A stretch of 64,000 bases of DNA from positions 62,001-126,000 of IMG/VR virus record IMGVR_UViG_3300031951_000001. One strand, given 5' to 3'. The notes below the pieces were generated by a model. That model was given only the letters and a program-made list of their open reading frames with translations, did not search any database and was not told where the DNA came from. Position numbers and translations under genes: made by a program. Numbering within the stretch: position 1 is the first letter of the stretch; each line of letters begins with the position of its first letter. Positions 4,050 through 57,060 of this stretch are shown here, piece after piece.

Positions 4050-4868
4050 TTACGCGACGTTAATCTCAAAGTTATCAACTTTGGCAACCGCGTTAGCTCT
4101 ATGTGAGCTAGTACCTCCTCCCGCATTTATATCGGCAAAATATTCCGCAGCCTCTTTTTTGTCTGTAAAGTTTGGGAAAGTTGATGCGGATTTACCTTTA
4201 GTAAAAAATGCGATTGCGATTTTTGCTGCGATTTCAGGGTCATTAACTAAATCTGGATTTTTAACTAACTCATCACCCATACCAATCATTCTACTATATT
4301 TTTCATAATTTTTAATACCGGTTAGTTGGTTGAACCCTCTACCTCTATACGTGAAACCATCGTCTCCACCTTGATTACCAACTGTTTTAGCGTAAACTAC
4401 ATTGAAAAATTTTCTCATATCACTTTTTAATGCGTTTAATTCACTATCACTATATCCGGCCACTCTTTTACCGAATATTTTTCTAATTCTACTATTGGCC
4501 GTGGTTGCGTATGAAACCTCACTTTTAGGTTTGAAATTACATTCCTTATTAATAACTGATAAAATACCTACTTGAGTATAGGGGTTTGTTATACCCGCCT
4601 CATTCATTTTATCTATTAAAAAATTTATATTTTTTTGTTGTTCAGAATCAAAATTACCAACAATTTTCACATCACCGTTTACAGGTGAACTTTTAGTGGT
4701 GCCTGTTTCCGATGGTTTTTCTTCTGATGAGCTTGGGGTTTTGGAGGGTTTCTCAAACATTTTCTTTATTGATAAAGCAAGTGCCTTTTCAATAAAAGAT
4801 TGCTCATTTATATTGTGTAGTTTTTTTATATGACTTTTTTCTTCTTCGGTAATTAATAATTTTCTCAT
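4050..4868 (-). CDS. glycoside hydrolase family 19 (chitinase/lysozyme-like) lytic enzyme
   Basis: DGFTYRGRGFNQLTGIKNY and NPDLV..P..AA motifs; N-terminal leader MRKLLITEEEKSHIKKLH. Confidence 0.8.
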   Translation of the reverse strand: MRKLLITEEEKSHIKKLHNINEQSFIEKALALSIKKMFEKPSKTPSSSEEKPSETGTTKSSPVNGDVKIVGNFDSEQQKNINFLIDKMNEAGITNPYTQVGILSVINKECNFKPKSEVSYATTANSRIRKIFGKRVAGYSDSELNALKSDMRKFFNVVYAKTVGNQGGDDGFTYRGRGFNQLTGIKNYEKYSRMIGMGDELVKNPDLVNDPEIAAKIAIAFFTKGKSASTFPNFTDKKEAAEYFADINAGGGTSSHRANAVAKVDNFEINVA

Positions 4869-4914
4869 TACAACCTTTTTATTATAAATATATTTATAGT
4901 GATAAAGTGATACA

Positions 4915-5304
4915 ATGAAAGTTACGGTAGTGCATCAGGATAAAGACAGAGCCTCAAGAAATAAAGAGGTGTGCGATAGATTTATAAAGTTTTTATTTTC
5001 ACAATATCCTCTAAAACATGACTTAAAGATATTTTTCCTTAAAAATCGTATAGGTGAAATGAGTACCGGCTCCAGAAGTGAAAATCACGTTATTAAAGTT
5101 CTGACCAAAAATAGAATCAATAGAGATATTCTTCGCACATTGGCACACGAGTGGGTACATGAATATCAGATGGATATTATGAAAAGGGAAAGAGGTCAAG
5201 ATATTGGTGGTAAGAATGAAAATGAAGCTAACGCTCTATCCGGCTCATTAATAAAAAAGTTCGAGAAAAAATTCCCGAACTTTGAAGATACGATGTATGA
5301 ATAG
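4915..5304 (+). CDS. HExxH zincin-like metalloprotein
   Basis: LRTLAHEWVHEYQ..ENEANA. Confidence 0.65.
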   Translation: MKVTVVHQDKDRASRNKEVCDRFIKFLFSQYPLKHDLKIFFLKNRIGEMSTGSRSENHVIKVLTKNRINRDILRTLAHEWVHEYQMDIMKRERGQDIGGKNENEANALSGSLIKKFEKKFPNFEDTMYE

Positions 5305-5308
5305 AATG

Positions 5309-5734
5309 TTAGTCGATACTAACAACTTCTAAATCAAAAATCAATTTTTTACCCGCCAAAGGATGATTAGCATCAATTTTAACGGTAGATTCATTAATTT
5401 CAACAATACGAACATTAATTGGTCCATTTGGACCCATTCCCTGCAGCATATCACCAACTGAAACATTTTCCGGAACCTGCTCTTTTGCAATTTCACTAAC
5501 CAACATTTCGTTTACATCACCATAAGCATCCTCACAAGGAATTTCAATGGTTCTTTTTTCGCCAATTGTCATACCAATCAAACCGCTTTCAAAACCTTTG
5601 ATTAGTTGTCCTTGACCTAATTTAGCTTTCAATGGCTCACGACCTTCAGTAAGTGAAGTATCGAAAACTGAACCATCTTCCAATCGACCGGTGTAGTTAA
5701 CCGATACTGAATCTGAATCTTGTATTGTTTTCAT
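5309..5734 (-). CDS. FKBP-type peptidyl-prolyl isomerase (SlyD/FkpB-like, no His-rich tail)
   Basis: VNYTGRLEDGSVFDTS, GQLIKGFE, DANHPLAGKKLIFDLEV. Confidence 0.92.
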   Translation of the reverse strand: MKTIQDSDSVSVNYTGRLEDGSVFDTSLTEGREPLKAKLGQGQLIKGFESGLIGMTIGEKRTIEIPCEDAYGDVNEMLVSEIAKEQVPENVSVGDMLQGMGPNGPINVRIVEINESTVKIDANHPLAGKKLIFDLEVVSID

Positions 5735-5891
5735 ATTGTATTTTTTTAAATAATAAGGTATTTTTTATATTAAACAAACTTTTTATTTGAAATTTTTTAA
5801 TAAAAAAAACTTGTGTGATGACTAAATCGTAGTATATTTGTAAAAATAACATATTTATAATATATAATAATTTTCTAATTCATTTGGGGGA

Positions 5892-6071
5892 ATGACAAGC
5901 GAAAAAATAATGGAAGAAATGTTTCATATTGCCTACAGACACGGTCTTATGAACGAATTACATGAAAGAGCAGGACAAATTCAAAAAGAATATAGTGCTC
6001 CTATTACAACCGCAGTACCACTTGCTTTTCAAGCTATGAGAAAAGAGGGGTTACTTCAGGATGAAGAGTAA
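5892..6071 (+). CDS. small hypothetical protein (59 aa, not in ORF track)
   Basis: MTSEKIMEEMFHIAYRHG..LLQDEE translated by hand; TATATTTG and TATTTAT motifs upstream. Confidence 0.5.
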   Translation: MTSEKIMEEMFHIAYRHGLMNELHERAGQIQKEYSAPITTAVPLAFQAMRKEGLLQDEE

Positions 6072-6395: not shown

Positions 6396-6638
6396 ATGAT
6401 AGAATCCACTATTACTCTATTAAAAAAACTTGACAAACGTAAAAAAATTGAAAAAGACTTCGAATGGGTGGTAAAAATCGTGTCATCTAGTGAAAATTTT
6501 AACCATATTGTGATTAGTAATAGGCTTTTTGAGGCTTTTACTCACAAATGGAGAAATCATATGACTGAAAACCAATTAAAGGAGTATAGTTTTACATTTG
6601 AACAAGAAAAAATGATAACAATAGGACATTTTTTGTAG
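6396..6638 (+). CDS. hypothetical protein
   Basis: 80-aa ORF with A-rich upstream region. Confidence 0.55.
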   Translation: MIESTITLLKKLDKRKKIEKDFEWVVKIVSSSENFNHIVISNRLFEAFTHKWRNHMTENQLKEYSFTFEQEKMITIGHFL

Positions 6639-6697
6639 AAAAAGTTGATTTTTAAGTGTTTTAGGACTATTTTTCTCAAAATTACAATATTTATCAA

Positions 6698-6765
6698 AAC
6701 TATCACTCTCATCAGAGAGCCTATATATAGAAAAAGGGACTTAATTTTTGTTAAGTCCCTTTTTT
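6698..6765 (+). ncRNA. candidate small RNA
   Basis: TATTTAT at 6688-6694, hairpin CTCTC-ATCA-GAGAG, then terminator GGGACTTAA/TTAAGTCCC plus T-run; no ATG in between. Confidence 0.35.
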
Positions 6766-6794
6766 CATTAAAAAACTTGCCTTATCTTTGTAAC

Positions 6795-7034
6795 ATGAAA
6801 GCAAAACTAACATTTGATTTAGATGACATCGATGATAAGATGGCTCACGAGCGTTGTGTTAAGTCAACCGACATGGCATTAGTTCTTTGGGAGATTATGA
6901 CCAATTCATACCGTGGTTTAACCAACGGATATGACGAAGATGACTCATATCACAAAGGAGTTGATGCGGTTTATGAAAAACTTCGTGAATTGATGGAAGA
7001 ACATGACATAAATCCACATAATTTAATACGATGA
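6795..7034 (+). CDS. hypothetical protein
   Basis: Start reassigned to the ATG 4 nt after TATCTTTG; begins MKAKLTFDL. Confidence 0.65.
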   Translation: MKAKLTFDLDDIDDKMAHERCVKSTDMALVLWEIMTNSYRGLTNGYDEDDSYHKGVDAVYEKLRELMEEHDINPHNLIR

Positions 7035-7079
7035 GAAAATTTTGGAATAAATTAGTTAAATTTTTTAAAACAGTATCAG

Positions 7080-7625
7080 ATGGTATCGATGAAACACAGT
7101 ATAAAAATGGTTGGGGAAAGCTTTAAAGACATAAAATACGCTGTTAAGCGATTTATTCGAAAAATTAAGAACGTTTTTCGATGGCTTCCCACAATTTGGA
7201 AGGATGAGGACTATGATAGTCACTTCATTAATGAAATATTAATCAAAAAACTCGAACATACCCGAGATTTCTTCTTGTCTGATAATACTCACATCCTTAA
7301 TGCTAAAGAGGTTGCTGCCGAAATTCAGGAGGCAATTGACCGTCTTCACATGACCCGTGATAGTTGGGAGTTTTATGAAGACCCGGCCATGGAGGAGATT
7401 CAGAAGAAGTGGGGGAAGAGTACATTCAATTGGATTCCGACAAATGATGGTACCGGCTCAATGTTTATGGAGATTGAACATGAGAATGTAAAAACTCCCG
7501 AGGATGAGGAACAATACTCAACCGAGTTTAGAGCCACAATGAAACAAGCTCGTAAGGATTATAGAAAAGATAAAAAAGAAGCGTATAAATTCATCGCGAA
7601 GAATATTGATAAATGGTGGGATTAA
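7080..7625 (+). CDS. hypothetical protein
   Basis: 181-aa ORF ending WWD; start uncertain. Confidence 0.65.
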   Translation: MVSMKHSIKMVGESFKDIKYAVKRFIRKIKNVFRWLPTIWKDEDYDSHFINEILIKKLEHTRDFFLSDNTHILNAKEVAAEIQEAIDRLHMTRDSWEFYEDPAMEEIQKKWGKSTFNWIPTNDGTGSMFMEIEHENVKTPEDEEQYSTEFRATMKQARKDYRKDKKEAYKFIAKNIDKWWD

Positions 7626-7636
7626 AAATTAATAAT

Positions 7637-8158
7637 ATGGAATGGTATATTGTAAGAGCACAAGCTAATCGGGAACGTAAAGTTTCAGAACGACTTCTTA
7701 AAGAAGGTGAAAAAGGGGAATTATCTGGAGTATTGGGTAGAGTTGTTGTACCGTTGGAGAAGGTATTTGCCACAAAAAACGGGAAAAAGACACAACGAGA
7801 AAAAGTATTGTTTCCTGGTTATGTATTTGTTGAGACCTCGGCAATTGGGGAACTCAAACAGGTTGTTAAAAAGATTGATGGAGCCACAGGACTATTGTCT
7901 GACAGAGCCGGTAACATCCAAGTTATTCCCGAAAATGAAGTTAGTCGTATGATTGGACTTCACGAAGAGAATAAGGCGAAAGAATTCACCGATATTTTCA
8001 GTATTGGTGATGAAGTTACGGTCGCTGAAGGCCCATTCGCATCATTCAAGGGGAATATTGAACATATTGACAAAGAAAGAGGTAAAATTAAGGTAAATGT
8101 CCTTATTTTTGGTAGACCAACATCAGTTGAACTCGAAGACACACAAATAAGAAAATGA
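7637..8158 (+). CDS. nusG: transcription termination/antitermination factor NusG
   Basis: WYIVRAQANRERKV, FPGYVFVE, KOW motif GDEVTVAEGPFASFKG, IFGRPTSVEL. Confidence 0.93.
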   Translation: MEWYIVRAQANRERKVSERLLKEGEKGELSGVLGRVVVPLEKVFATKNGKKTQREKVLFPGYVFVETSAIGELKQVVKKIDGATGLLSDRAGNIQVIPENEVSRMIGLHEENKAKEFTDIFSIGDEVTVAEGPFASFKGNIEHIDKERGKIKVNVLIFGRPTSVELEDTQIRK

Positions 8159-8841
8159 AGATAACATTCATCAGCGATACTCACAATAAGCACAAACAAA
8201 TACAGGATTTACCTGGCGGTGACTTGCTTATTCACGCTGGTGATATATCAAGTATGGGTCACAAACACGAGATTCAACAATTCTGTAAGTGGTTTGATGG
8301 CTTGACTAATTATTCTGCGGTTGTCTTCATTGCCGGTAATCACGACTTTGGATTTGAGAAACGACCCGAAGAAACTATGGAAATTGTTAATTCATACAAG
8401 TGGATTACATACCTTCAAGACAATCATTTGTCCTTTGGTCCTGATATGGAAACCCTTGTTAAAATTTATGGTAGTCCATGGCAACCTGAGTTTCATAATT
8501 GGGCGTTTAATTTACCAAAGAATGGATGGGAACTTGAGCAGAAGTGGAACGACATTCCTGAGGATACGGACATCTTGATTACTCACGGACCTGCGTTTGG
8601 TATCTTGGATACTGTGGTGGGTCAGTATGATAATCTTGGTTGTGAATTACTAACCAAGCGGATTAAGAAAATTAAACCCAAAATTCATGTCTGCGGACAT
8701 ATACACTCAGGGTATGGTTATGTTTTTGACGGAGATACTCACTTCATAAATGCATCAGTGCTGGATGAACAGTATCAATACACCCAAAAACCTCTAACAG
8801 TAGAGTGGGACCCTGTAACGAATAACTTGGAGTTTATTTAA
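8155..8841 (+). CDS. calcineurin-like metallophosphoesterase
   Basis: SDTH, HAGD, AGNHD, THGP and CGHIH motifs. Confidence 0.9.
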   Translation: MKITFISDTHNKHKQIQDLPGGDLLIHAGDISSMGHKHEIQQFCKWFDGLTNYSAVVFIAGNHDFGFEKRPEETMEIVNSYKWITYLQDNHLSFGPDMETLVKIYGSPWQPEFHNWAFNLPKNGWELEQKWNDIPEDTDILITHGPAFGILDTVVGQYDNLGCELLTKRIKKIKPKIHVCGHIHSGYGYVFDGDTHFINASVLDEQYQYTQKPLTVEWDPVTNNLEFI

Positions 8842-8845
8842 TTTG

Positions 8846-8872
8846 AAACCCCTCAGAAATGAGGGGTTTTTT
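8846..8872 (+). terminator. intrinsic terminator
   Basis: CCCCTCA-GAAA-TGAGGGG followed by T6. Confidence 0.85.
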
Positions 8873-8935
8873 ATTGTCGGTTAATTATAGTAAATCAAAA
8901 AATTTTATAAAGAGTATAATGATATTTATCAATAT

Positions 8936-10528
8936 ATGGATAAAAAAATAAAAATTTTAATTTTATCGTCATTGGTCATAATGTCGGTATTTTTCATGGT
9001 TAAAACTGCGGTTTTAATCGAAATTATATCTAGCTCAAAATTAACAAGAGGAACGGAATATGTTTGTTTTTTATTTTTTATTCCTGTTTTTTACAATTTA
9101 ATTAGACACTACATTAAAACTAATAGGTTATATAATCAGTTTAAAGAATTTGAAAATTTTGTTGATACCTCAGTACTGGTTAGTAAGGCTGATAAGAATG
9201 GTAAGATAACATATGTTAACCAAAAATTCAGTGAAGTGTCAGGGTGGAGTTTAGAAGACGCCGCAGGTAAAGACCACCGAATAGTTAACTCAGGATTTCA
9301 TCCCAAAGAAATGTGGGAGGAAATGTATAAAACAACAATCAAAGATAAAAAAATATGGAATGCTGTCGTAACTAACAAAGCAAAGGATGGTCATCTATAT
9401 TGGGTTGATTCATATATTAAAGCCGAATTTGAAGAAAATGGAGACCTAAAAGGTTTTATGTCAATAAGATATGATGTTTCAGAAGTTAAGAAAAAAGAAC
9501 TTGAGATTAGAAACAGAATGAATGCCATCAATCAATCTAATGCGGTTATTGAGTTTGATTTGAGTGGTAATATAATGTATGCCAATAAAAATTTCTGTGA
9601 TACTATGGGATATACTATGGAAGAAATTGTGGGAAAACATCATAGTATATTTTTAAATGAGGAGTATTCAAAGTCACAGGAGTATAAAGAATTTTGGGAT
9701 ACTTTAAGAAGTGGTGATTTCATATCTGCTCAATTTATGAGAATTAAAAAGAATGGTGATGAAATTTGGTTACAAGCCACATATAACCCAATCTTTGATA
9801 ATGATGGTAAAGTTATTCGAATTATGAAAATTGCGATTGATATTACTGACAAAGTTTTACAATCCCAAGAGATAGAAAAAAAGAATACTTATTTGGAACA
9901 TGCCGCAAAAATATTGAGACACGACATGCACTCGGGTATTAACACTTACATGCCGAGGGGGTTAAGTTCTTTGGAGAGAAGATTAAAAACTGAAGACATT
10001 GAGAATTTAAAAATTGAAGCTCCGATTAAAATGATTAAGGAGGGATTAAGACACTCACAAAAAGTATATAAGGGTGTTTATGAATTTACCAATTTGGTTA
10101 AAAAGGATGTTGTGTTAAATAAAGCTGAATGTAATTTAAGAGACATATTAAATGATTATCTATCATCAACCGCATATCATAGTCAGGTTATTATTGAAGA
10201 ATTACCAACCATAGAAGTTAATGAAGCATTATTCTGTACTGCGGTAGATAACTTAATTAGGAATGGATTGAAGTACAATGATTCTGAATCAAAATTTGTA
10301 AAAATATACATGGAAGGTGATGAGTTAATGGTTCAGGACAATGGACGAGGTATAACTCAAGAAGATTTCGACCACTTATCAAAACCATACACAAGAAAAG
10401 AAGGACAAAAAGAGTCAGGAACTGGACTCGGATTAAACATATGTGTGGCGATATTACAAGAACACAAGTTTTTGGTAAGATGCGAGAAAAATGAGATAGG
10501 AACTAAACTGAAAATAAAAATAAAATAA
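8936..10528 (+). CDS. membrane-anchored PAS-PAS sensor histidine kinase
   Basis: Two N-terminal TM segments; two PAS/PAC domains; H-box LRHDMH, N-box NLIRNGLKY, G1 DNGRGI, G2 GTGLGL. Confidence 0.9.
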   Translation: MDKKIKILILSSLVIMSVFFMVKTAVLIEIISSSKLTRGTEYVCFLFFIPVFYNLIRHYIKTNRLYNQFKEFENFVDTSVLVSKADKNGKITYVNQKFSEVSGWSLEDAAGKDHRIVNSGFHPKEMWEEMYKTTIKDKKIWNAVVTNKAKDGHLYWVDSYIKAEFEENGDLKGFMSIRYDVSEVKKKELEIRNRMNAINQSNAVIEFDLSGNIMYANKNFCDTMGYTMEEIVGKHHSIFLNEEYSKSQEYKEFWDTLRSGDFISAQFMRIKKNGDEIWLQATYNPIFDNDGKVIRIMKIAIDITDKVLQSQEIEKKNTYLEHAAKILRHDMHSGINTYMPRGLSSLERRLKTEDIENLKIEAPIKMIKEGLRHSQKVYKGVYEFTNLVKKDVVLNKAECNLRDILNDYLSSTAYHSQVIIEELPTIEVNEALFCTAVDNLIRNGLKYNDSESKFVKIYMEGDELMVQDNGRGITQEDFDHLSKPYTRKEGQKESGTGLGLNICVAILQEHKFLVRCEKNEIGTKLKIKIK

Positions 10529-10536
10529 AAAAAACT

Positions 10537-10968
10537 ATGATTGATTCAATTTTACTGGTAGATGACGAGGATTTATTCCATTTAGTGTTTGAAGATAGTT
10601 GTTCACTTCTTGATATAACATTATCTTTAAAAAGTTTAAATAGTTCAGATGAGGCAGCCAAATTATTTGAGAAATGGCAATCAAACAGTGCCGACAAACC
10701 TGAATGTGTGTTTGTTGATTTGAATATCATTGGGTCTTCCTTTGATGGTATTGAACTTATTAGAAAGATTAACTTTGAATACGGAAATAATGTTGTGATT
10801 GGAATCATTTCATCATCAAACGAACCTGAAGAACAGGCAAAGGCAATTCAATCTGGTGCTCAATTTTGGATTATAAAATCAGACGAGATTGAACCACGAT
10901 TAGAGGAGTTTAAGAAGGATTACGAAGGATATAAAAATAGAACAGCCCCATTTAAGATTTACAAATGA
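10537..10968 (+). CDS. single-domain response regulator (receiver)
   Basis: ILLVDDED, phosphoacceptor VFVDLN, ISSS, WIIKS. Confidence 0.88.
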   Translation: MIDSILLVDDEDLFHLVFEDSCSLLDITLSLKSLNSSDEAAKLFEKWQSNSADKPECVFVDLNIIGSSFDGIELIRKINFEYGNNVVIGIISSSNEPEEQAKAIQSGAQFWIIKSDEIEPRLEEFKKDYEGYKNRTAPFKIYK

Positions 10969-11648
10969 TAAAATTTACCCCTGAAATAAAAAAAGAATTA
11001 ATTACCTTATCTGAAACAAAAAATTTATTTTTGGAAGGAAACATTGTTAAGGTAATTGATTCTGATGGGGATGATAATTTTAAAGAATACCTTAAAAAGT
11101 GTGGGGAAAGGGATACCGCAAATCGTAAGAAAAGGCTCGATATTACCAAACAAATTCAGACACAAAACAAAGAGCTATCTGACTTAAATGACGAGAATCA
11201 AAAAATATTAGAGGAGTTACAGTCAACCCTAAAAGAAGTTGAGGACTCCAAGATGACATTTGAGGTTCAAAACAGAGAATTAAACGAGTGGAAAGCCGAT
11301 AATATAAGATTAACCGAAGAACTAACAGTTGAGATGGTTAAATCCGAACAGGCGAGAGTGGATGCCGAAAAGGCAAAACAGAATGCTGAAAATGACTTGG
11401 ATGTACTTCAAAAGAAAACTCAATTTGAGTTAATCAATACAATTGTTAGAGTGGCATTATTTGTAATAATCGGTGTTGGTATTACTACCACGGCATTATA
11501 TACTGTTGCGTTATTTACAAACCAAGACACCCAAATAATAGGTTCAACTTGGAGTAATATGTTTGGTATCTTACTTACTAATGCGTTTAGTATAGTCGGA
11601 ACAATAATGGGTGTTAAATACGCATCAGAAAAACCAAAGAAGAATTAG
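10965..11648 (+). CDS. coiled-coil protein with two C-terminal TM helices
   Basis: Long heptad region then two hydrophobic segments; ATGA overlap with the receiver gene. Confidence 0.75.
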   Translation: MIKFTPEIKKELITLSETKNLFLEGNIVKVIDSDGDDNFKEYLKKCGERDTANRKKRLDITKQIQTQNKELSDLNDENQKILEELQSTLKEVEDSKMTFEVQNRELNEWKADNIRLTEELTVEMVKSEQARVDAEKAKQNAENDLDVLQKKTQFELINTIVRVALFVIIGVGITTTALYTVALFTNQDTQIIGSTWSNMFGILLTNAFSIVGTIMGVKYASEKPKKN

Positions 11649-11995: not shown

Positions 11996-12086
11996 AATAT
12001 TAAGGATATATTATAAATAGATTAAGGAAATGTTAAGTAATATTAACAATTTTGACTATCGAAAAATTTAACATACATATTAGTGT

Positions 12087-12326: not shown

Positions 12327-12329
12327 TTT

Positions 12330-13355: not shown

Positions 13356-13368
13356 ATTACTTTAGGGT

Positions 13369-13393: not shown

Positions 13394-13397
13394 ACGT

Positions 13398-13427: not shown

Positions 13428-13499
13428 TTTGAAATAAATACGAGATAAAGTTGAAAAAATAAAGTAATCACTTAAAATTTTTTTTGAGTATTTATTAGT

Positions 13500-14540
13500 A
13501 TGAGAGTTAGATTATCGGAAGAACAATTAAAAAAGTTGATAAAAGAGGATTTGGGAGTGTCCAGAGCGGCATTAGCATATACCAATTTAATCTATTCTAA
13601 ATTAGAATCTGAAGTAAAAGAATTTTTAGACACAAAAAAAAGTGGCAAATACAAATTTACGATTTCAGTAGATGAAATGTCATATATCTATCAATCTAGT
13701 ATGGATGACTTTATCGAATTACCTATTGAACAGATTGAAATTACTCTAACTTTTGTGAGCTCTCCCAGAAAAAAAGCCAATGTTCCATTCACAACTGGTG
13801 GAGCGGCCCAATCAATACAAAAAGAATATCTAAAAGGGTCTTATTTAAAAGAACCATCATTTGAATTACCAAAATATATTTTAGAGGAAGTTGACCAAAC
13901 TATTGTTGCCAGAATGGACCTGTCTGTAGAAATAAGAAGTTCTTATGATGACAGTATGAGTGAATCGGTATTATTTGATTTTAGAGATACGATTACACAT
14001 GAATGTAACCACTTGTATGAATTCTACAAAAGAGCTGAAAGGGGTGCTAAACAGATGAATGTAACTTTAAGTTGGGCTGGTAACAAAAATGTTAATGTAA
14101 AAAGGGAAATTTTCAGTGTTTGGCAAAATTTTATGGATTATGTATATAATTCAGAACCGTATGAGGTTAATGCCAAAGTACAAGAAGCATTTAGTTTGAG
14201 GTCTAGAATGCCTTTTGAAGAATTCAAAAATACAAAGTATTGGAGAGGGGCTAATAACCTAAAGAATTTCAATTCAGATGTGTTTATTGAAACATTATTA
14301 TCTAAAATAGGTGAATTATCACCAGGTAAAGAAGTCAGTATTTTCAATAATCTATATAAGTGGTTTTTAACTGATTACTACAAATGGATGAAACTTCACA
14401 ATGAAAAACCAGCAAGATTCATCGATAACTCAAAAAATTTGGTAGATTTGATTAGTAAATTCCAACCAAGAATCAATAAAGCGGGTGAAACCTTATTAAA
14501 AAAATATATGAGGTTGTATGCTTTAGAACCGGAAATCTAA
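13500..14540 (+). CDS. HExxH zincin-like protein with N-terminal LSEEQL leader
   Basis: THECNHLYE..YEVNA; begins MRVRLSEEQLKKLIKE. Confidence 0.65.
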   Translation: MRVRLSEEQLKKLIKEDLGVSRAALAYTNLIYSKLESEVKEFLDTKKSGKYKFTISVDEMSYIYQSSMDDFIELPIEQIEITLTFVSSPRKKANVPFTTGGAAQSIQKEYLKGSYLKEPSFELPKYILEEVDQTIVARMDLSVEIRSSYDDSMSESVLFDFRDTITHECNHLYEFYKRAERGAKQMNVTLSWAGNKNVNVKREIFSVWQNFMDYVYNSEPYEVNAKVQEAFSLRSRMPFEEFKNTKYWRGANNLKNFNSDVFIETLLSKIGELSPGKEVSIFNNLYKWFLTDYYKWMKLHNEKPARFIDNSKNLVDLISKFQPRINKAGETLLKKYMRLYALEPEI

Positions 14541-14541
14541 T

Positions 14542-17459: not shown

Positions 17460-17981
17460 TTATTTTTCTTTAATTAAAGCTATACATCTTTTCAAATATT
17501 CTTTGGCTCTTGGTGATGGAGTGAACTCGTCATCTCTCGATTGTAATGCCAAAACTCTTTCAATGTCCTTTACAAGTTCGGTACCGTGCTCATTTTCTTT
17601 GTATAATTCTATGACTTTATCCATAGCTTTATTACATTCACCACTTGTTTCATCATAGTAGTTTTTGTTTCTAAATTTGTTAAGGTGATTCATCATTTCA
17701 TAAGATAAATGAGCTCCACCATCGGTAACGTCCTTAAATAATCTCAAATTATTAAGGATACCAATGGTATCAACCATAGAATTGACACCCATACCCCTTC
17801 TCATAACACCTGGAGTGTAATTAACGTAGTTATCGGCCTGACCGACAATCTCATCCAAAGGAATGGTGTTATTAGTTAAACACATTGGTTTGCGTTCTTT
17901 TTCTTTAATTTCAGTTTCTTCTAAAATTCTTTGACGTATTACTTTTCGTAGTTGAGCTTCGTCTATTTTAATTCTTTCCAT
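17460..17981 (-). CDS. hypothetical protein with IKIDEAQLRKVI leader
   Basis: Start reassigned to MERIKIDEAQLRKVIRQRILEE. Confidence 0.65.
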   Translation of the reverse strand: MERIKIDEAQLRKVIRQRILEETEIKEKERKPMCLTNNTIPLDEIVGQADNYVNYTPGVMRRGMGVNSMVDTIGILNNLRLFKDVTDGGAHLSYEMMNHLNKFRNKNYYDETSGECNKAMDKVIELYKENEHGTELVKDIERVLALQSRDDEFTPSPRAKEYLKRCIALIKEK

Positions 17982-18571: not shown

Positions 18572-19006
18572 ATGTCTAAAATTGTAAGATTGACAGAATC
18601 TGATTTAAAAAGAATTATCGAAATGGTCTCTTTGGAGATGAAAAAAAACTTAACTGAATCTGTTGAGTCAAAATCAAGAATTATCTATGAAGATGCATAT
18701 GGTAGCGTTGAGGAAACTGATTTTGTGGTCAGTGATTTATTAAGTGAAGCTGAATATAAAGGTAGAAAAGTACAACTTGGTAAAATCATGCAGGGTGACG
18801 TAAAGAAATTCAAAGTTTATGTTAAAAACGATAAAGGTAATGTGGTTAAAGTTAATTTTGGATTTGGGGGCTCGTCGGCCAAAGGTAAAAGAATGGTAAT
18901 TAAAAAAAATAATCCGGCAAGACGTAAATCATTCAGAGCAAGACACAACTGTGACAATCCTGGACCAAGATGGAAGGCCAGATATTGGGCGTGTCGTACT
19001 TGGTAA
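18572..19006 (+). CDS. basic phage protein with RLTESDL leader
   Basis: KKFKVYVK..KVNFG..RRKSFRARHNC..ARYWAC..W; begins MSKIVRLTESDLKRII. Confidence 0.7.
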   Translation: MSKIVRLTESDLKRIIEMVSLEMKKNLTESVESKSRIIYEDAYGSVEETDFVVSDLLSEAEYKGRKVQLGKIMQGDVKKFKVYVKNDKGNVVKVNFGFGGSSAKGKRMVIKKNNPARRKSFRARHNCDNPGPRWKARYWACRTW

Positions 19007-40957: not shown

Positions 40958-41347
40958 ATGGCAAAAGTTATTAAACTCACAGAAGCGGATTTAGAAAATA
41001 TTGTAAGAAAAGTAATAGAGGAACAAGAAACCCAAGAAGGTGTTTTTGACCCTTTGGTTAATGCGGCTCAAGGTCTAAAAGGCGTTTGGAGAGGAGAAGG
41101 ATATGACTACTTCAAATATTTGAGCTCATTGAGAGGTTTAACTCGTAAGTTAAAAAAACTTGATGCTCCGAATGTTAAAATAATGACTCAATTAACCGAT
41201 TTGAAAAATAAGGTTACCGTTTCAAAAATGCCAACCGATAAAAAACAAAATCTTATAAATACAATAGATAAAGCGATAGCTCATTTTAACGCCTATTCCG
41301 GATTGATTAATACAATAGAACAGTTAGCATCACAAAAATTAGCATAA
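40958..41347 (+). CDS. hypothetical protein with IKLTEADL leader
   Basis: MAKVIKLTEADLENIVRKVIEEQ. Confidence 0.7.
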   Translation: MAKVIKLTEADLENIVRKVIEEQETQEGVFDPLVNAAQGLKGVWRGEGYDYFKYLSSLRGLTRKLKKLDAPNVKIMTQLTDLKNKVTVSKMPTDKKQNLINTIDKAIAHFNAYSGLINTIEQLASQKLA

Positions 41348-51784: not shown

Positions 51785-53584
51785 ATGGAGAATAACAATA
51801 ATCAAATTACGGTTTGGCAAAGGTTAACGAGAGCATTTGGTCCAAATGCGTTACTCAACCAGGATTATCCAACCTACAAATTCGATAAGAAGGAGTTACT
51901 TCGCACAACTTCAAAACAAGAATACGATAAAGAGCTGTTACAAGCTCAACAAACTTTTTATTTAGCAAATCAATGGACTAAAATAGAAAGTAATCTTTAT
52001 ACCCAAGCGGTTTATTACGAACCAACAAGATTGGCTTCGTTTTATGATTATGAATCTATGGAATATACTCCCGAGATTTCAGCGGCTTTGGATATCTACG
52101 GTGAAGAGTCAACAACCGTTGACCAGAATGGTTATATGCTTCAGATTTATTCTGAATCAAAAAGAATTAAGGGTATTCTAACCGATTTATTTAACAATGT
52201 TTTAGATATTAACACCAACTTACCTATGTGGACTAGAAACACTTGTAAGTATGGTGATAACTTTGTGTATTTGAAATTAGACCCTGAAAAGGGTGTTGTT
52301 GGGTGTATGCAGTTACCGAACATTGAGATTGAGCGTTTGGAACGTGGTATGCCGGCAAAATCACAGAATGTAGAAGAACCAAAAGAAAATAGAGGGTTAA
52401 GATTTAAGTGGAAAGCAAAGGACATGGAATTTAATTCATGGGAAATTGCTCACTTTAGATTGATGGGTGATGACAGAAAGCTGCCATACGGTACATCTAT
52501 GTTGGAAAAGGCTCGTCGTATTTGGAAACAATTATTGTTATCTGAAGATGCTATGTTGATTTATAGAACATCGAGAGCACCTGAAAGAAGGGTATTCAAA
52601 GTGTTTGTTGGTAATATGGACGATAAAGATGTGGAGGCGTATGTACAACGTGTCGCCAACAAATTCAAACGTGACCAAGTTGTTGACAATAAAACAGGTA
52701 ATGTTGATATGAGATTTAATCAAATGGCCGTTGACCAAGATTACTTTATCCCTGTTAGAGACGCGGCAGCTCCAAACCCAATTGATACATTACCTGGTGC
52801 TCAAAACCTGTCAGAAATTGCGGATATTGAATATATCCAAAAGAAACTTTTGACCGCACTTCGCGTACCAAAAGCATTTTTAGGGTTTGAAGAAGTTGTT
52901 GGTGAAGGTAAAAATTTATCATTACAGGATATTCGTTTTGCTCGCACAATCAATAGAATTCAAAAATGTATGATTGCCGAATTAAATAAAATCGCAATCA
53001 TTCACTTGTTCTTGATGGGATTTGAAGATGAGTTATCAAACTTTACATTAGGGTTAACCAATCCGTCAACCCAAGCAGATTTACTTAAAATTGACGTTTG
53101 GAAAGAAAAAGTTTTATTATATAAAGACGCGGTTACCGCCATCGAAGGTATTGCACCTGTGTCAGTTTCTTGGGCTAAAAAACACGTACTTGGTTTTTCT
53201 GATGAAGAAATTAAACTTGATTTACAACAACAAAGAATTGAAAAGGCAGTTGGTGCAGAATTGACTAACACCGCAACAATCATTACACATACAGGTATAT
53301 TTGATAATATCGATAAATTATATGGTTCTATCACTGGAGGTACTGCGGCTGGAGGAGCACCACCTCCACCACCAGGAGGTGAAGAAATGGGAGGAGCTCC
53401 CCCACCATCTCCACCGGCAGGAGGTGAAGAACCGCCAATTCCCGAGTCGTTTAAGAGGGATAATTTGAAAATTTTACTAGAGAATGATAGTCTAACTGAA
53501 TCAGATAGTTTTATCGATTTATCAAGAGCTAAAAATTCTTTGGGGGAAATTGAGTCTGAATTGTCAAAACTCTTGAGGGATTGA
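51785..53584 (+). CDS. portal protein (T4 gp20-like)
   Basis: EDAMLIYRTSRAPERRVF, DYFIPVR, IDTLPGAQNL, ALRVPK. Confidence 0.93.
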   Translation: MENNNNQITVWQRLTRAFGPNALLNQDYPTYKFDKKELLRTTSKQEYDKELLQAQQTFYLANQWTKIESNLYTQAVYYEPTRLASFYDYESMEYTPEISAALDIYGEESTTVDQNGYMLQIYSESKRIKGILTDLFNNVLDINTNLPMWTRNTCKYGDNFVYLKLDPEKGVVGCMQLPNIEIERLERGMPAKSQNVEEPKENRGLRFKWKAKDMEFNSWEIAHFRLMGDDRKLPYGTSMLEKARRIWKQLLLSEDAMLIYRTSRAPERRVFKVFVGNMDDKDVEAYVQRVANKFKRDQVVDNKTGNVDMRFNQMAVDQDYFIPVRDAAAPNPIDTLPGAQNLSEIADIEYIQKKLLTALRVPKAFLGFEEVVGEGKNLSLQDIRFARTINRIQKCMIAELNKIAIIHLFLMGFEDELSNFTLGLTNPSTQADLLKIDVWKEKVLLYKDAVTAIEGIAPVSVSWAKKHVLGFSDEEIKLDLQQQRIEKAVGAELTNTATIITHTGIFDNIDKLYGSITGGTAAGGAPPPPPGGEEMGGAPPPSPPAGGEEPPIPESFKRDNLKILLENDSLTESDSFIDLSRAKNSLGEIESELSKLLRD

Positions 53585-53603: not shown

Positions 53604-54320
53604 ATGGTAAAGTTCGGTTTATTAAAATCAAAGATAGAAAAATTGATGTTAGAATCTTATTCTAACGGAACATTCAAGACTGAAATGAAAAATTTCAAAA
53701 AGAATGTATTGGAAAATAAAAACATTTCAAAACTTTTTTATCTATATGATGAATTGAATTCTAATAAAGGTTTGAATGAATCTATTGTGGATGATTATAT
53801 CTACGAATGTATAACGATATATGAAAATACAATCAATAAGATTAAAAATTCAACCCTTGTTGATTTATCTAATTGGGTGGTTAATGTAAAGTCAGATAAC
53901 AATTACTCTACTATCGACAATCTATTCTCTAATGATGTTCTCACAATTGAATCTAGATTATCTAGCAAAAAATTGATTAAAGAGTCGTTAAAGAAAAAAC
54001 CTGCAGATAAAAAAGAAGTTGTTAATTTACCATTAAGTACTATGGTAAATGTTGCTAATAAAACAATTTCTAATTTTATTGAAAGTTTGAATGAGTCTGA
54101 AAAGAAAGAATTAGTTGATTTTCTTAAGACTGACGATAAAGAATTAGAGGGTAATTTTGAGCAACTAAAAGAAAGTGTCACCAAAAAATTGGAGACAATT
54201 AAAGAGAATGCTGACACAGAAACTAAAAGTAGGATTAATGAAACTTTGGAAAAGGTGGTTTCAGAAAAATACGACAAATTTACTTATTTCAAATTAAAGA
54301 ATCTTAACGAGAATCTTTAA
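53604..54320 (+). CDS. head-module hypothetical protein
   Basis: 238 aa directly after the portal; LNES motifs. Confidence 0.7.
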   Translation: MVKFGLLKSKIEKLMLESYSNGTFKTEMKNFKKNVLENKNISKLFYLYDELNSNKGLNESIVDDYIYECITIYENTINKIKNSTLVDLSNWVVNVKSDNNYSTIDNLFSNDVLTIESRLSSKKLIKESLKKKPADKKEVVNLPLSTMVNVANKTISNFIESLNESEKKELVDFLKTDDKELEGNFEQLKESVTKKLETIKENADTETKSRINETLEKVVSEKYDKFTYFKLKNLNENL

Positions 54321-54505
54321 AAGTCTTTGTTTTTCATTTTCTGAACATACTTGGCCTTTTTCAACATTTTTCTTTTTCTAACCGACTTCTTTTCATACTC
54401 CTTTCTTTCGACGAGTTGACTTGACTGTCGGGTCTTAATCACTTTACTTTTGAGTAACTTTAATGCTCTCTCAATACCGTTTTTATCTACTTTGACAATT
54501 AACAT
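54317..54505 (-). CDS. rpsU: phage-encoded ribosomal protein bS21
   Basis: IERALKLLKSKV..RKEYEKKSVRKR pattern; 62 aa, basic. Confidence 0.85.
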   Translation of the reverse strand: MLIVKVDKNGIERALKLLKSKVIKTRQSSQLVERKEYEKKSVRKRKMLKKAKYVQKMKNKDF

Positions 54506-55061: not shown

Positions 55062-55085
55062 AAAACAAAGTATTTATTATAAAAA

Positions 55086-55811
55086 ATGAATATGGAAGTT
55101 TTGAAACCCGGACAATCAGGCAAAGGCATTCTAATCGAATACGATGCTGGATACTTATCACCAACTGAAAAACGTAATGTTGATTTGATACATGAGTCCA
55201 AAGGAATGTTGGACCATTCAAAACCATTTGAATTCTACGCAGTACTTCAGAAATTTAACACCCCAAACAGAAACGGAAGAATATATCCTGAAAAAGTATT
55301 AAAGAGAGAAGCCGACAATTATAAGAAAATGATTAACAAGGGTATTGCTTTATCCGAACTTAATCACCCTGAGTCATCACTTGTTGACTTGGACAGAGTT
55401 TCTCATTCAATTAGTGATATATGGTGGGAAGGTCCTGTTCTTATGGGTAAATTAAAATTATTAACTTCACCAGGTTTTCATGAGAGAGGTATTGTATCAA
55501 CCAAAGGAGACCAAGCGGCAAATCTTTTAAGACAAGGTGTTACACTTGGTATATCATCTCGTGGTGTAGGGTCGCTTAAAAAAATTGGGGAACAAAACGA
55601 AGTACAGGATGACTTTGAGTTGATTTGTTTTGACCTTGTATGGTCTCCATCCACTCCTGGTGCTTATCTTTTCACTGAACCTGATGACAGATTTAAGTTT
55701 GAAGAAAACTTGGATGAGGAGAAAAAAATGAAAGCTGAAAGAGAATTTGGTGGCCCAACCGACAAATCGCTTGACTTAATGAAGAAATTGAACGATTATT
55801 TGGGTTACTAA
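55086..55811 (+). CDS. prohead core protease (T4 gp21-like)
   Basis: NRNGRIYP, ELNHP, VSH, GISSRGVGS, FDLV..PSTPGA. Confidence 0.92.
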   Translation: MNMEVLKPGQSGKGILIEYDAGYLSPTEKRNVDLIHESKGMLDHSKPFEFYAVLQKFNTPNRNGRIYPEKVLKREADNYKKMINKGIALSELNHPESSLVDLDRVSHSISDIWWEGPVLMGKLKLLTSPGFHERGIVSTKGDQAANLLRQGVTLGISSRGVGSLKKIGEQNEVQDDFELICFDLVWSPSTPGAYLFTEPDDRFKFEENLDEEKKMKAEREFGGPTDKSLDLMKKLNDYLGY

Positions 55812-55822
55812 AACTCAATAAA

Positions 55823-56032
55823 ATGGACGAAAAATATTTTGTAGCAAAAATTACAACAGACATGCCTGACTCCGAAACAGGTAAAATTAAAAAATTAAGA
55901 CAGGAAAAATTAGTTAAAGGTTATTCACCGACTGATGTTGAAGCAAAAGTGACAAAGGTTTTTGAGAACTATTCGGAAGACTGGAGAATAACAGCTATTG
56001 TAGAAAGTAAAATTGATGAAGTGATAGGATAA
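55823..56032 (+). CDS. small hypothetical protein
   Basis: 69 aa followed by a terminator at about 56055-56082. Confidence 0.7.
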   Translation: MDEKYFVAKITTDMPDSETGKIKKLRQEKLVKGYSPTDVEAKVTKVFENYSEDWRITAIVESKIDEVIG

Positions 56033-56103
56033 TCAAAAAATTATCAATAGTTGTAAAAGGAGGGGAAACCCTCCTTTTTTTTATTCTGATATATTTATCA
56101 GAT

Positions 56104-57060
56104 ATGAAAATTACAATTTCAGAGGGTCAGTATAAGATACTATCAGAATATTTCAAAAGACCAACAGACCCTATTGCCGCTCATATTAGGAAAACATTGA
56201 AAGATGTTTATTCCCCATCTAATTGGGGTAAAATTGAAAACCCTGATGAGGGTTGTGCCACCGATTTTGGGGTCATTGGGGTTTATCAGCATATACCTGG
56301 TAAAGATGAATGGTCGATACTTAACAGATTTGACACCAATACCAAAGTAAGACGAAAAATGGAGTCCTTGTTTCATGAGGATGAACCTGATACTGAATTA
56401 ACTCCTAAAAAATTCATGGAGTGGATTACTCTGAACGCAGAAAGATTATTTAAGGGTCCAATCACTGATGAATTAGTAGAATTGAATAAAACCACAATTG
56501 AGAGGGGAAATCAAAATGAAGATTATGCAATTCAAATATTACAAGAATTTTTCGGTGAGAACGCCAAAATTGTAAGATTTTGTTCTGGTGATATTAGAGA
56601 CACTAGAAAGGGAATGGATATTGCGGTAACTGCGGGTGGTAAAACATTTCACGTACAAGTAAAACCATTTACCTACATAAGAAGTTTGGTTGATAAAGAT
56701 GGTGATACTTTTTTTGAAGTAACATCAAGGGGTTTTGACTCTACAAAATATTCTGAATCAAATGTACAAGTATTTTTATTCGTTGATTTAGATAGAAAAA
56801 GATATGTTGCATTCGCTAATAAGAAAAATAAAATTAGAAAAGTAACAACTGAAATAACAAGGTATGACGAACCGTATCTGTTAAGCAATATAAATTTTGA
56901 AGGTCAAACAAAAGTTAAGTCATATAGAAACACTCCTGTCGAAGACGATATATTCAAAGTCGGAGAAAGAAGATTACAAAATCTAGAATTTAGAAAAGCG
57001 GAAATCGAAAAAATGATTGAGCTTGAAAAACAAAAGTTAGGAAAATCAGGAGAAAAATAA
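56104..57060 (+). CDS. PD-(D/E)xK-like nuclease with ITISEGQY leader
   Basis: GNQNE..D..KGMDIAV..HVQVKP. Confidence 0.55.
   Translation: MKITISEGQYKILSEYFKRPTDPIAAHIRKTLKDVYSPSNWGKIENPDEGCATDFGVIGVYQHIPGKDEWSILNRFDTNTKVRRKMESLFHEDEPDTELTPKKFMEWITLNAERLFKGPITDELVELNKTTIERGNQNEDYAIQILQEFFGENAKIVRFCSGDIRDTRKGMDIAVTAGGKTFHVQVKPFTYIRSLVDKDGDTFFEVTSRGFDSTKYSESNVQVFLFVDLDRKRYVAFANKKNKIRKVTTEITRYDEPYLLSNINFEGQTKVKSYRNTPVEDDIFKVGERRLQNLEFRKAEIEKMIELEKQKLGKSGEK

What the first reader, a model, noticed from the sequence alone, without database searches (positions are those of the whole stretch)
4050..57060. Shared N-terminal address tag on unrelated proteins: a possible modular head-loading system
Seen: unrelated bodies start with similar leaders: KLLITEEEKSHIKKL (GH19, 4868-), RVRLSEEQLKKLIKE (zincin, 13500), RIKIDEAQLRKVI (17981-), IVRLTESDLKRII (18572), VLITEHQRKVLITE (21687-), VIKLTEADLENIV (40958) and ITISEGQYKILSE (nuclease, 56104). 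The rough consensus is phi-x-phi-[STD]-E-x-[QDE] followed by an amphipathic helix and a later [IL]-x-E, and all seven have TATTTAT upstream. Known: T4 internal proteins use an N-terminal capsid-targeting sequence removed by gp21, which cuts after [LI]-x-E. Inference: a portable tag lets this phage package and inject a variable enzyme payload scattered across the genome.
Basis: partly seen in the sequence, partly recalled or inferred. Interest (0 to 1): 0.8.

Follow-up and report, generated by a model that had tools for sequence, protein, structure and literature searches.

The report
Swappable N-terminal leader peptides on phage proteins
Seven unrelated late proteins of this large T4-like lake phage begin with short leader peptides from one interchangeable family, found on roughly 9,000 protein clusters in uncultured phages; each leader ends in the cut site of the phage's head protease, so it most likely works like T4's capsid-targeting tag, but this is unproven.

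Summary
All seven N-termini are at the stated coordinates, and all seven genes have TATTTAT upstream.

Relatives show three leader classes:
- A: MKKvIRLTESDLKRIVKRVIxE (genes at 13500, 17981, 18572, 40958).
- B: MKIIITESQYKxLxE (21687, 56104).
- C: lIITEEEKxxIrxLYxLNE (GH19 gene, 4868).

Evidence that the leaders are portable:
- They are strictly N-terminal.
- The peptide is conserved while synonymous codons vary freely.
- Classes are swapped on the same body: GH19, DUF5872 and the 17981 family each carry two to four leader types.
- A class A profile finds 8,992 protein clusters among 1.84 billion representatives.
- A cultured AT-rich T4-like control phage has none.

The window encodes a gp21-type prohead protease (Peptidase_S77), a gp23-type capsid protein with an invariant FLINE|AT site, a portal and a scaffold. 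Each leader class ends in [IL]-x-E, the gp21 motif, and in class A (the only class with a multi-sequence column analysis) conservation stops exactly there.

The best reading is a cleavable capsid-targeting propeptide, analogous to the T4 CTS. Packaging, cleavage and injection are untested, and the complex prediction gave no answer. I rate it a new variant of a known kind, with interest about 0.7.

The parts
4803..4868 (-). Class C leader MRKLLITEEEKSHIKKLHNINE of the GH19 protein (gene 4050-4868). The predicted cut is after I20-N-E22.
   Evidence: Searches give the sequence. GH19 homologues carry class C, B, A or helix-only leaders, almost all ending in [IL]-x-E. The class C profile scores it 46.6 bits, but that profile is not independent of its orthologues.
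13500..13547 (+). Class A/B-intermediate leader MRVRLSEEQLKKLIKE of a 346-aa HExxH protein (gene 13500-14540). The predicted cut is after I14-K-E16.
   Evidence: It scores 19.3 bits with a profile built from foreign contigs. The orthologue in L009 starts MKVLLSENQLKTLIKED. The HECNH motif is at residues 167-171. There is no Pfam or PDB match.
17919..17981 (-). Diverged class A leader MERIKIDEAQLRKVIRQRILE of a 173-aa protein (gene 17460-17981). The predicted cut is after I19-L-E21.
   Evidence: Orthologues carry a canonical class A leader (L021, L059) or a class C leader (L020). E8 and E21 are invariant, and a linker of variable length follows.
18572..18637 (+). Class A leader MSKIVRLTESDLKRIIEMVSLE of a 144-aa protein with a DUF5872-type body (gene 18572-19006).
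   Evidence: It scores 29.9 bits with the external profile. Among 8 orthologues the leader is 85% identical and the linker 50%. The same body carries class B or helix-only leaders in L022, L030, L044 and L074. It carries no such leader in pelagiphages or phage C48C1.
21634..21687 (-). Class B-like leader MKMSVLITEHQRKVLITE of a 210-aa protein with several hydrophobic segments (gene 21055-21687). The predicted cut is after I16-T-E18.
   Evidence: Searches give the sequence. The 40%-identical homologue in L009 starts MKLTVVINESQKKVLITES. Profile support alone is within noise.
40958..41023 (+). Canonical class A leader MAKVIKLTEADLENIVRKVIEE of a 129-aa protein (gene 40958-41347). The predicted cut is after I20-E-E22.
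   Evidence: It scores 34.7 bits with the external profile. It is the first row of alignment A1, in which conservation ends at E22.
56104..56148 (+). Class B leader MKITISEGQYKILSE of a 318-aa PD-(D/E)xK-like protein (gene 56104-57060). The gene is inserted between the protease/DUF4494 genes and the scaffold gene. The predicted cut is after L13-S-E15.
   Evidence: There are 100 full-length homologues, and E15 is at least 90% conserved while the leader type varies. The AF2 model has pLDDT 89 overall, with the leader as a lower-confidence N-terminal helix. The fold resembles Hjc and I-Ssp6803I, weakly. The gene has the same position in the 307-kb relative L079 but is present in only 4 of about 60 related head modules.
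55086..55811 (+). Prohead protease, T4 gp21 type (Peptidase_S77). This is the presumed enzyme that removes the leaders.
   Evidence: Pfam PF03420 at E = 1.2e-24 and PHROG 207 head maturation protease. It has its own N-terminal GILIE site.
57143..58663 (+). Putative scaffold (gp22 position): 506 aa, with very acidic linkers and a conserved C-terminal coiled-coil region. It is a candidate receptor of the leaders.
   Evidence: The assignment rests on its position between the protease and capsid genes and on the alignment of four relatives. It has no family match.
58692..60545 (+). Major capsid protein, gp23 type. The predicted maturation site FLINE|AT is at residues 57-60 (nt 58860-58871).
   Evidence: Pfam Gp23 at E = 2e-73. 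The site is invariant in 32 related capsid proteins and kept as L[IL]xE|AT in more distant ones.
51785..53584 (+). Portal protein, gp20 type. TerL lies at 49959-51719.
   Evidence: PHROG 213 portal and TerL PHROG hits. The orthologue in L079 matches Portal_T4.
4884..4890 (-). One of seven TATTTAT promoter-like sites upstream of the tagged genes. The others are 13489-13495(+), 18002-18008(-), 18549-18555(+), 21694-21700(-), 40937-40943(+) and 56092-56098(+). The extended form is (A/G)TATTTAT.
   Evidence: There are 56 sites against 36 expected. The motif lies within 45 nt upstream of 31 of 89 genes, including TerL, the 53604 gene, the protease, the scaffold and all 7 tagged genes. It is kept in relative L079.

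Best explanation
The leaders are cleavable capsid-targeting propeptides. The steps below are marked as shown or inferred.

**Shown.**
- This large T4-like phage, and a big uncultured clade around it, puts a short N-terminal module in front of many fast-evolving accessory proteins.
- The module is a hydrophobic strand, then a T/S-E helix cap, then an amphipathic helix that ends in [IL]-x-E.
- It comes in interchangeable classes A, B and C, plus helix-only forms.

**Inferred from the T4 precedent.**
- The module docks the protein onto the assembling prohead core (scaffold, protease or the capsid delta domain).
- The gp21-type protease then cuts after the terminal Glu and frees the mature cargo inside the head.
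- The cargo is available for ejection with the DNA.

**Also consistent.**
- The genes are driven by the same ATATTTAT promoter-like element as the head genes.
- They sit in variable islands, so new cargo can be recruited simply by acquiring a leader.
For: **The module is portable and selected as a peptide.**
- It is strictly N-terminal: all 78 IMG/VR matches, and 127 of 128 profile hits.
- It sits on at least 28 unrelated bodies in the loci and on 8,992 clusters in 1.84e9 representatives.
- Synonymous codons vary freely.
- Different classes occur on one body: GH19, DUF5872 and the 17981 family.

**Conservation ends at a protease-type site.**
- In 63 class A leaders L7, T8, E9, D11, I15 and E22 are nearly invariant, and nothing after E22 is conserved.
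- P3 is I/L in 90% and P1 is E in 90% of leaders, in columns the search pattern did not constrain.
- E15 is at least 90% conserved in the 56104 family, E21 is invariant in the 17981 family, and class C ends in L-N-E.
- In two-body proteins, internal copies of the module are preceded by phi-x-E in 32 of 50 cases, against a background of 0.28 (P = 1e-7).

**The matching machinery is present.**
- The window has a Peptidase_S77 protease, a gp23-like capsid protein, a portal and a scaffold.
- The capsid site FLINE|AT is invariant, and the protease carries its own GILIE.
- T4 gp21 cuts after L/I-x-E, and the T4 CTS loads diverse internal proteins (PMC9026906, PMC3012670).

**Leader-bearing contigs with visible head genes are all T4-like with an S77 protease**.

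**Regulation and cargo type fit.**
- All 7 tagged genes share the promoter-like motif of the head genes.
- Recognisable bodies are GH19, lysozyme+LysM, M23, PG_binding_1 and a nuclease-like fold.
- None of the 20 longest tagged bodies scanned with Pfam, nor the window's seven, is a replication or metabolic enzyme.
Against: - No direct evidence places any tagged protein in a virion or shows cleavage.
- The complex prediction with scaffold and protease gave no answer.
- [IL]-x-E is a short motif (1.45 per 100 aa proteome-wide). About a fifth of class B leaders lack it at the expected place, and the 18572 leader has S rather than I/L at P3.
- For two leader-bearing groups I could not see head genes, so co-occurrence with an S77 protease is unproven there. 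These are the marine contig filed under a Prochlorococcus single-cell genome and the gut Bacteroidales MAG contigs.
- If about 8% of genes are tagged, a ~320-kb genome would have dozens of cargo species, which is many.
- A GH19 enzyme could instead be the endolysin, which is not normally packaged.
- The leaders show no evident sequence similarity to the 10-residue T4 CTS.
Confidence: 0.55

Rival explanations
1. The leader is a docking or assembly helix for some other destination or partner and is not removed by the head protease. Candidates are a tail or baseplate site, the cell envelope, or the phage's own chaperones (DnaK, ClpA/B-type AAA+).
For: - The module is an amphipathic helix, a generic protein-protein or membrane-binding element.
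- The phage encodes DnaK and a double AAA+ unfoldase, and the 13500 and 40958 genes lie next to them.
- Many recognisable bodies act on the cell wall, which would also fit tail-associated or lysis-related proteins.
- Packaging has not been shown.
Against: - It does not explain why conservation stops exactly at a Glu preceded by I/L at P3.
- It does not explain why internal copies are flanked by phi-x-E.
- It does not explain why the same motif marks the capsid protein's maturation site.
- Classes A, B and C differ strongly in charge yet substitute for one another, which argues against simple membrane binding.
Confidence: 0.2
2. The leader is a protease-removed pro-sequence whose main job is to keep enzymes inactive or soluble until head maturation (a zymogen-type propeptide), not to address them.
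For: - It has the same cleavage-site features as the best explanation.
- Several bodies are potentially self-harming hydrolases: GH19, M23, lysozyme and a nuclease-like fold.
Against: - A nearly invariant 22-residue peptide shared by thousands of unrelated, mostly non-enzymatic small bodies is unlikely to inhibit each of them specifically.
- A shared partner explains the conservation better.
- The head protease acts inside proheads, so its substrates must get there anyway.
Confidence: 0.1
3. The similarity reflects a nucleic-acid-level element (a recombination cassette boundary or a translation-initiation region), or is a compositional accident of AT-rich gene starts.
For: - The leaders are A/T-rich and directly follow a promoter-like motif, in some genes only 4-6 nt from the ATG.
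- Shared 5' ends could promote cassette exchange.
Against: - Codons vary synonymously at every conserved residue.
- Conservation extends 22 residues.
- The module also occurs internally in proteins.
- An AT-rich T4-like control phage has none.
- Chance matches in cellular genomes are internal, not N-terminal.
Confidence: 0.03

Closest known systems
T4 capsid targeting sequence (CTS) of internal proteins IPI/IPII/IPIII and Alt, removed by the gp21 prohead protease
   Same: - It is a short N-terminal peptide shared by otherwise unrelated proteins.
- It ends in L/I-x-E.
- The phage has gp21-, gp22- and gp23-type head machinery.
- The cargo set is diverse and fast-evolving, and the genes are late (PMC9026906, PMC3012670).
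   Different: - There is no evident sequence similarity to the 10-residue T4 CTS.
- The leaders here are 15-22 residues long, with a strand, a cap and a helix.
- There are at least three interchangeable classes.
- There are far more tagged genes: 7 in 64 kb, and about 9,000 clusters for class A alone.
- Internal copies occur in two-body proteins.
- Function is untested.
Propeptides of phiKZ / 201phi2-1 / SPN3US head and inner-body (ejection) proteins, cut by a gp21-like protease
   Same: These are giant phages with many head proteins processed after Glu. Propeptides contain several redundant sites, and many of the proteins are ejected (PMC9026906, PMC5694885).
   Different: Their motif is S/A-x-E, and no conserved shared leader sequence is described. 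Here a nearly invariant leader is shared across unrelated bodies, and the head genes are closer to T4 than to phiKZ.
P1 DarB N-terminal capsid targeting signal
   Same: The N-terminal ~30 residues are sufficient to load a heterologous protein into a myovirus head (PMC9024508).
   Different: It is a single protein rather than a family of tagged genes. No shared consensus or protease-site ending is described.
Encapsulin cargo-loading peptides
   Same: A short conserved peptide addresses diverse cargo to the interior of an HK97-fold shell. This comparison is from my own knowledge, not a tool result.
   Different: They are usually C-terminal and not proteolytically removed, and they act in cellular nanocompartments rather than virions. 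This is an analogy only.

Membership tests
T4-type capsid targeting propeptide (CTS) system | A short peptide at the extreme N-terminus, shared by otherwise unrelated proteins | tested here: met
   the leaders are strictly N-terminal, sit on at least 28 unrelated bodies in the loci, and match 8,992 clusters in the representative library.
T4-type capsid targeting propeptide (CTS) system | The peptide ends in the prohead protease motif L/I-x-E | tested here: met
   P3 is I/L in 90% and P1 is E in 90% of class A leaders, and conservation ends there. Searches show the same for the 56104 family, class C and the 17981 family. This holds at sequence level only, and about 20% of class B leaders lack it.
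T4-type capsid targeting propeptide (CTS) system | The phage encodes a gp21-type protease, a scaffolding core and a gp23-type capsid protein that is itself processed at L/I-x-E | tested here: met
   Pfam Peptidase_S77 and Gp23, plus the portal PHROG. The FLINE|AT site is conserved. The scaffold is assigned by position only.
T4-type capsid targeting propeptide (CTS) system | Sequence homology to the T4 IPIII/IPI CTS decapeptide | not tested
   No T4 sequence was fetched, and a 10-residue peptide is too short for a meaningful homology test. By length and pattern the leaders are clearly different, so I do not claim membership by descent.
T4-type capsid targeting propeptide (CTS) system | The leader is sufficient to load a protein into proheads, and the tagged proteins are present in virions | not testable with these tools
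   This needs virion proteomics or a reporter fusion. The complex prediction gave no answer.
T4-type capsid targeting propeptide (CTS) system | The leader is removed by the prohead protease during maturation | not testable with these tools
   Cleavage is inferred only from motif position and conservation.
phiKZ-like inner-body / ejection protein propeptides | Cleavage motif S/A-x-E and phiKZ-type head genes | tested here: not met
   The motif here is [IL]-x-E. The head genes match the T4 families Gp23, Portal_T4 and S77.

The most novel reading that the evidence does not exclude
A very abundant, uncultured clade of large T4-like aquatic and gut phages may use a small set of interchangeable, nearly invariant leader peptides as a general cargo-loading code. 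If so, dozens of accessory proteins per genome, and thousands of families in all, would be packed into the head and delivered to the host. These include cell-wall hydrolases, nuclease-like proteins and many unknown small proteins. The leader would then be a sequence-only marker of the whole 'ejectome' of uncultivated phages, and a ready-made tag for loading foreign proteins.
Probability: 0.4. Interest if true: 0.85.

Novelty: new variant of a known kind. Interest (0 to 1): 0.7.

Why it matters
- **A sequence marker for delivered proteins.** If the leaders are capsid-targeting propeptides, one could list from sequence alone the proteins that a large group of uncultivated phages carries into cells. 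This class is normally found only by virion proteomics of cultured phages, and it is rich in anti-defence and host-takeover functions.
- **Cargo recruitment by leader swapping.** It would show that cargo is recruited by exchanging leaders, on a scale far beyond the handful of T4 internal proteins.
- **Practical use.** It would offer new tags for packaging proteins in phage heads.
- **Value if the capsid reading is wrong.** A 22-residue peptide that is nearly invariant on about 9,000 unrelated protein clusters is an undescribed and testable feature of phage biology. I found no paper that mentions it.

Tried and rejected
**Searches and predictions that led nowhere.**
- The complex prediction (scaffold + protease + first 60 residues of the 40958 protein) gave no answer and is not used as evidence.
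- tblastn of a 30-residue leader against 50,697 cultured phage records found no match. tblastn of the 56104 protein also found none.
- A full-text search for the motif strings, and a search for CTS-type descriptions in T4-like or metagenomic phages, found nothing on this leader.
- The short class B profile (14 columns) cannot separate 56104, 21687 and 4868 from internal decoys. I placed these three through their homologues instead.
- Class C and helix-only profiles found no further members in the window.
- I could not see the head genes of the marine leader-bearing contig or the gut leader-bearing contigs. One contig was too short, and the flanks of the others were uninformative.
- The protein atlas returned only unnamed viral clusters.
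- A PDB sequence search for the 13500 protein found nothing, so 'zincin' stays a motif-level guess.
- The RNA runs holding the window exist only as low-share contigs, which are useless for mapping transcript starts, so I did not run read laying.

**Ideas considered and rejected.**
- Ribbon-helix-helix N-terminus: there is no second helix, and the bodies are unrelated.
- Sec, Tat or SAR signal: the leaders are charged, not hydrophobic.
- Cationic membrane-active helix: classes B and C are not cationic yet substitute for class A.

Full report
**What the window is.** The window is 33-36% G+C and carries a T4-type head module:
- large terminase at 49959-51719;
- gp20-type portal at 51785-53584;
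- Peptidase_S77 (gp21-type) prohead protease at 55086-55811;
- a 506-aa acidic protein in the scaffold position at 57143-58663;
- gp23-type major capsid protein at 58692-60545.

The nearest cultured relatives are distant. TerL is 27% identical to that of Flavobacterium phage vB_FspM_immuto. Identical segments lie on IMG/VR contigs of 166 and 322 kb. The clade is abundant: more than 600 IMG/VR stretches matched patterns from the protease, 598 encode a relative of it, and the best 80 are at least 77% identical. The RNA runs that hold the window, at a low share of words, are labelled aquatic metagenomes, with linked lake-water runs.

**Checking the observation.** All seven N-termini are as quoted. 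Seven of those hits start at residues 3-5, against 0.1 expected. Because the pattern was derived from these same seven proteins, I looked for independent data.
- A degenerate DNA pattern encoding [IV][KR]LTExDL[KR][KR][IV][IV] found 78 matches in IMG/VR. Every match lies 0-10 codons after an ORF-initial ATG (in one the first pattern codon is itself the ATG), and the bodies fall into at least 28 unrelated clusters.
- The same pattern in 596 Gb of cellular genomes found 10 matches. Six are internal chance matches in ordinary proteins. Four are N-terminal leaders on phage-like contigs.
- In the loci fetched, the loose pattern is N-terminal 166 times against 2.6 expected.
- In 100 kb of the AT-rich control phage immuto it occurs 0 times in 121 ORFs.

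**Anatomy of the leaders.** Relatives reveal three main classes.
- Class A: M-K-K-[IV]-[IV]-[RK]-L-T-E-S-D-L-[KR]-[KR]-I-V-[KR]-R-V-[IL]-x-E. Four HMM iterations give 128 ORFs, and 127 of the hits start within the first 12 residues.
- Class B: M-K-I-I-I-T-E-S-Q-Y-K-x-L-x-E. There are 46 ORFs, all N-terminal.
- Class C: [IL]-I-T-E-E-E-K-x-x-I-[RK]-x-L-Y-x-L-N-E.
- Helix-only forms such as M-K-x-L-I-R-K-I-L-K-E-E also exist.

The window's genes are assigned as follows.
- With a profile built only from foreign contigs, 40958, 18572 and 13500 score 34.7, 29.9 and 19.3 bits. The best internal decoy scores 7.0.
- The 17981 gene is a diverged class A. Its orthologues carry canonical class A leaders, and one homologue carries class C.
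- The 56104 and 21687 genes are class B-like.
- The GH19 gene is class C.
- The short class B profile alone cannot prove the last three. Their placement rests on homologues.

**Portability.** The same body carries different leader classes in different phages.
- GH19 homologues have class C (most), class B, class A or helix-only leaders. Some 184-aa forms have none.
- The DUF5872-type body of 18572 has class A, class B or helix-only leaders in relatives. It has no such leader in pelagiphages, Roseobacter phages or archaeal viruses.
- The 17981 family has class A or class C leaders.

Conserved residues use all synonymous codons, so selection acts on the peptide. A profile of 63 class A leaders finds 8,992 representative clusters (E ≤ 1e-3) among 1.84 billion, and nearly all matches start at residue 1.

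**The link to the head protease.**
- In class A, L7, T8, E9, D11, I15 and E22 are nearly invariant, and nothing after E22 is conserved.
- In columns that the search pattern did not fix, P3 is I/L in 90% and P1 is Glu in 90% of leaders.
- E15 is at least 90% conserved across 90 homologues of 56104, although their leader types differ.
- E21 is invariant in the 17981 family and is followed by a linker of variable length.
- The capsid protein has an invariant F-L-I-N-E|A-T at residues 57-60. This is the place where T4 gp23 is cut (that position is from my own knowledge, not a tool result). More distant relatives keep L-[IL]-x-E|A-T.
- The protease has its own G-I-L-I-E near its N-terminus.
- T4 gp21 cuts after L/I-x-E, and the T4 CTS is a 10-residue N-terminal peptide that loads unrelated internal proteins into the scaffolding core (PMC9026906, PMC3012670).
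- Among the top-scoring representatives, 50 internal copies of the module occur in two- or three-body proteins. In 32 of them a phi-x-E lies within 15 residues upstream, against a background of 0.28 (P = 1e-7). This is as if the module were excised on both sides.

**Context.**
- TATTTAT, in extended form (A/G)TATTTAT, precedes 31 of 89 genes. These include TerL, the gene after the portal, the protease, the scaffold and all seven tagged genes (Fisher p = 4e-4). It is kept in a 307-kb relative.
- Every leader-bearing contig on which head genes are visible is T4-like with an S77 protease.
- Tagged genes are rare among core head genes (13 of 982 ORFs near the protease). They cluster in variable islands, for example four in 13.5-21.7 kb of the window and five in tandem in L014.
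- The 56104 gene is an accessory insertion between DUF4494 and the scaffold in 4 of about 60 related modules. Its AF2 model (pLDDT 89) has a PD-(D/E)xK-like core, with weak Foldseek matches to Hjc and I-Ssp6803I. The leader appears as a separate, lower-confidence helix.
- Bodies with recognisable domains are mostly cell-wall enzymes or binders: GH19, Phage_lysozyme+LysM, M23 and PG_binding_1, plus DUF5872. None of the 20 longest tagged bodies scanned, nor the window's seven, is a replication or metabolic enzyme.

**Interpretation.** The best-supported explanation is a cleavable capsid-targeting propeptide, functionally like the T4 CTS (confidence about 0.55).
- Shown: a portable, peptide-level-selected N-terminal module that ends in the protease motif, in phages with the matching protease.
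- Inferred: docking to the prohead core, cleavage, residence in the head and ejection.

The rivals are as follows.
- A docking helix for another destination or for the phage's own DnaK or ClpA/B-type chaperones (0.2).
- A zymogen-type pro-sequence (0.1).
- A nucleic-acid-level or compositional effect (0.03), largely excluded by the codon analysis and the controls.

The complex prediction gave no answer. Co-occurrence with the protease could not be checked for the marine and gut leader-bearing contigs.

**Comparison and novelty.** The system works like the T4 CTS, but it is not a sequence relative of it as far as can be judged. It differs in several ways: longer structured leaders, several interchangeable classes, internal copies, and a scale of thousands of protein families. 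I found no description of it. I rate it a new variant of a known kind, with interest about 0.7. The most novel reading not excluded is a general cargo-loading code that marks the ejected proteome of a large uncultured phage clade (probability about 0.4).

Noticed in passing
window 14658-16523 (+), 41359-43416 (-), 8936-10528 (+): The phage encodes a DnaK/Hsp70 homologue, a ClpA/ClpB-type double AAA+ protein (AAA, AAA_lid_9, AAA_2, ClpB_D2-small) and a PAS-domain histidine kinase. Two tagged genes (13500 and 40958) lie directly beside the chaperone genes.
   Followed up: partly
window 54317-54505 (-): A 62-aa ORF lies on the opposite strand inside the head module, between the gene after the portal and the protease. 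Its orthologue in L079 has a weak Pfam Ribosomal_S21 hit, so it may be a phage-encoded ribosomal protein S21. It is conserved in 63 of 80 related loci.
   Followed up: partly
window, e.g. 13489-13495, 20067-20073, 28484-28490, 43698-43704, 56092-56098: The (A/G)TATTTAT promoter-like motif lies only 4-6 nt from the ATG of eight genes. This would give leaderless or nearly leaderless mRNAs if it acts as a -10-type element. Other genes are preceded by TAnnTTTG, the Bacteroidota-type host promoter.
   Followed up: no
P0113-P0168 (representative proteins), e.g. P0113 residues 107-131, P0134 residues 161 and 470: The class A module also occurs internally, once or twice, in multi-body proteins. It is usually preceded by a phi-x-E such as ..LSEN|KKVVRLTESDL... 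This looks like a polyprotein-like arrangement with an excisable linker.
   Followed up: partly
L091 (QCKH01000009.1, filed as Prochlorococcus sp. AG-409-L21), 6505-18369; L095 1675-2139 (immuto gp083): Further N-terminal leader types occur. The helix-only form MKxLIRKILKEE is on five genes within 12 kb (6.5-18.4 kb) of the 20-kb locus L091, from a 64-kb contig binned with a Prochlorococcus single-cell genome. A ..RMQKLAGIITESQF.. type occurs in the cultured Flavobacterium phage immuto. The true host of the single-cell contig is unclear.
   Followed up: partly
window 56104-57060 (+); L097, L112, L118: The PD-(D/E)xK-like tagged gene is present between DUF4494 and the scaffold in only 4 of about 60 related head modules. 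It is therefore a mobile accessory insertion with its own TATTTAT, not a core head gene.
   Followed up: yes
L002 1429-1746 (phage C48C1, Kyanoviridae): The leaderless DUF5872 homologue of a cyanophage-family phage starts MKKFKQYIDE. This decapeptide ends in I-x-E and recalls the length and pattern of the T4 CTS (the T4 comparison is from my own memory). It might be a T4-style tag on the same body.
   Followed up: no
window 28379-28451, 32254-32418, 36942-37015: There are four tRNA genes: Arg-TCT, Leu-TAA and two Met-CAT. The 35.8-37.1 kb stretch has few convincing ORFs.
   Followed up: no
window 43710-45923 (+): A 737-aa protein combines a nucleotidyltransferase-like N-terminus with Peptidase_M23 and PG_binding_1 domains. 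It has TATTTAT upstream but no leader. A second M23 protein lies at 34493-35215.
   Followed up: no
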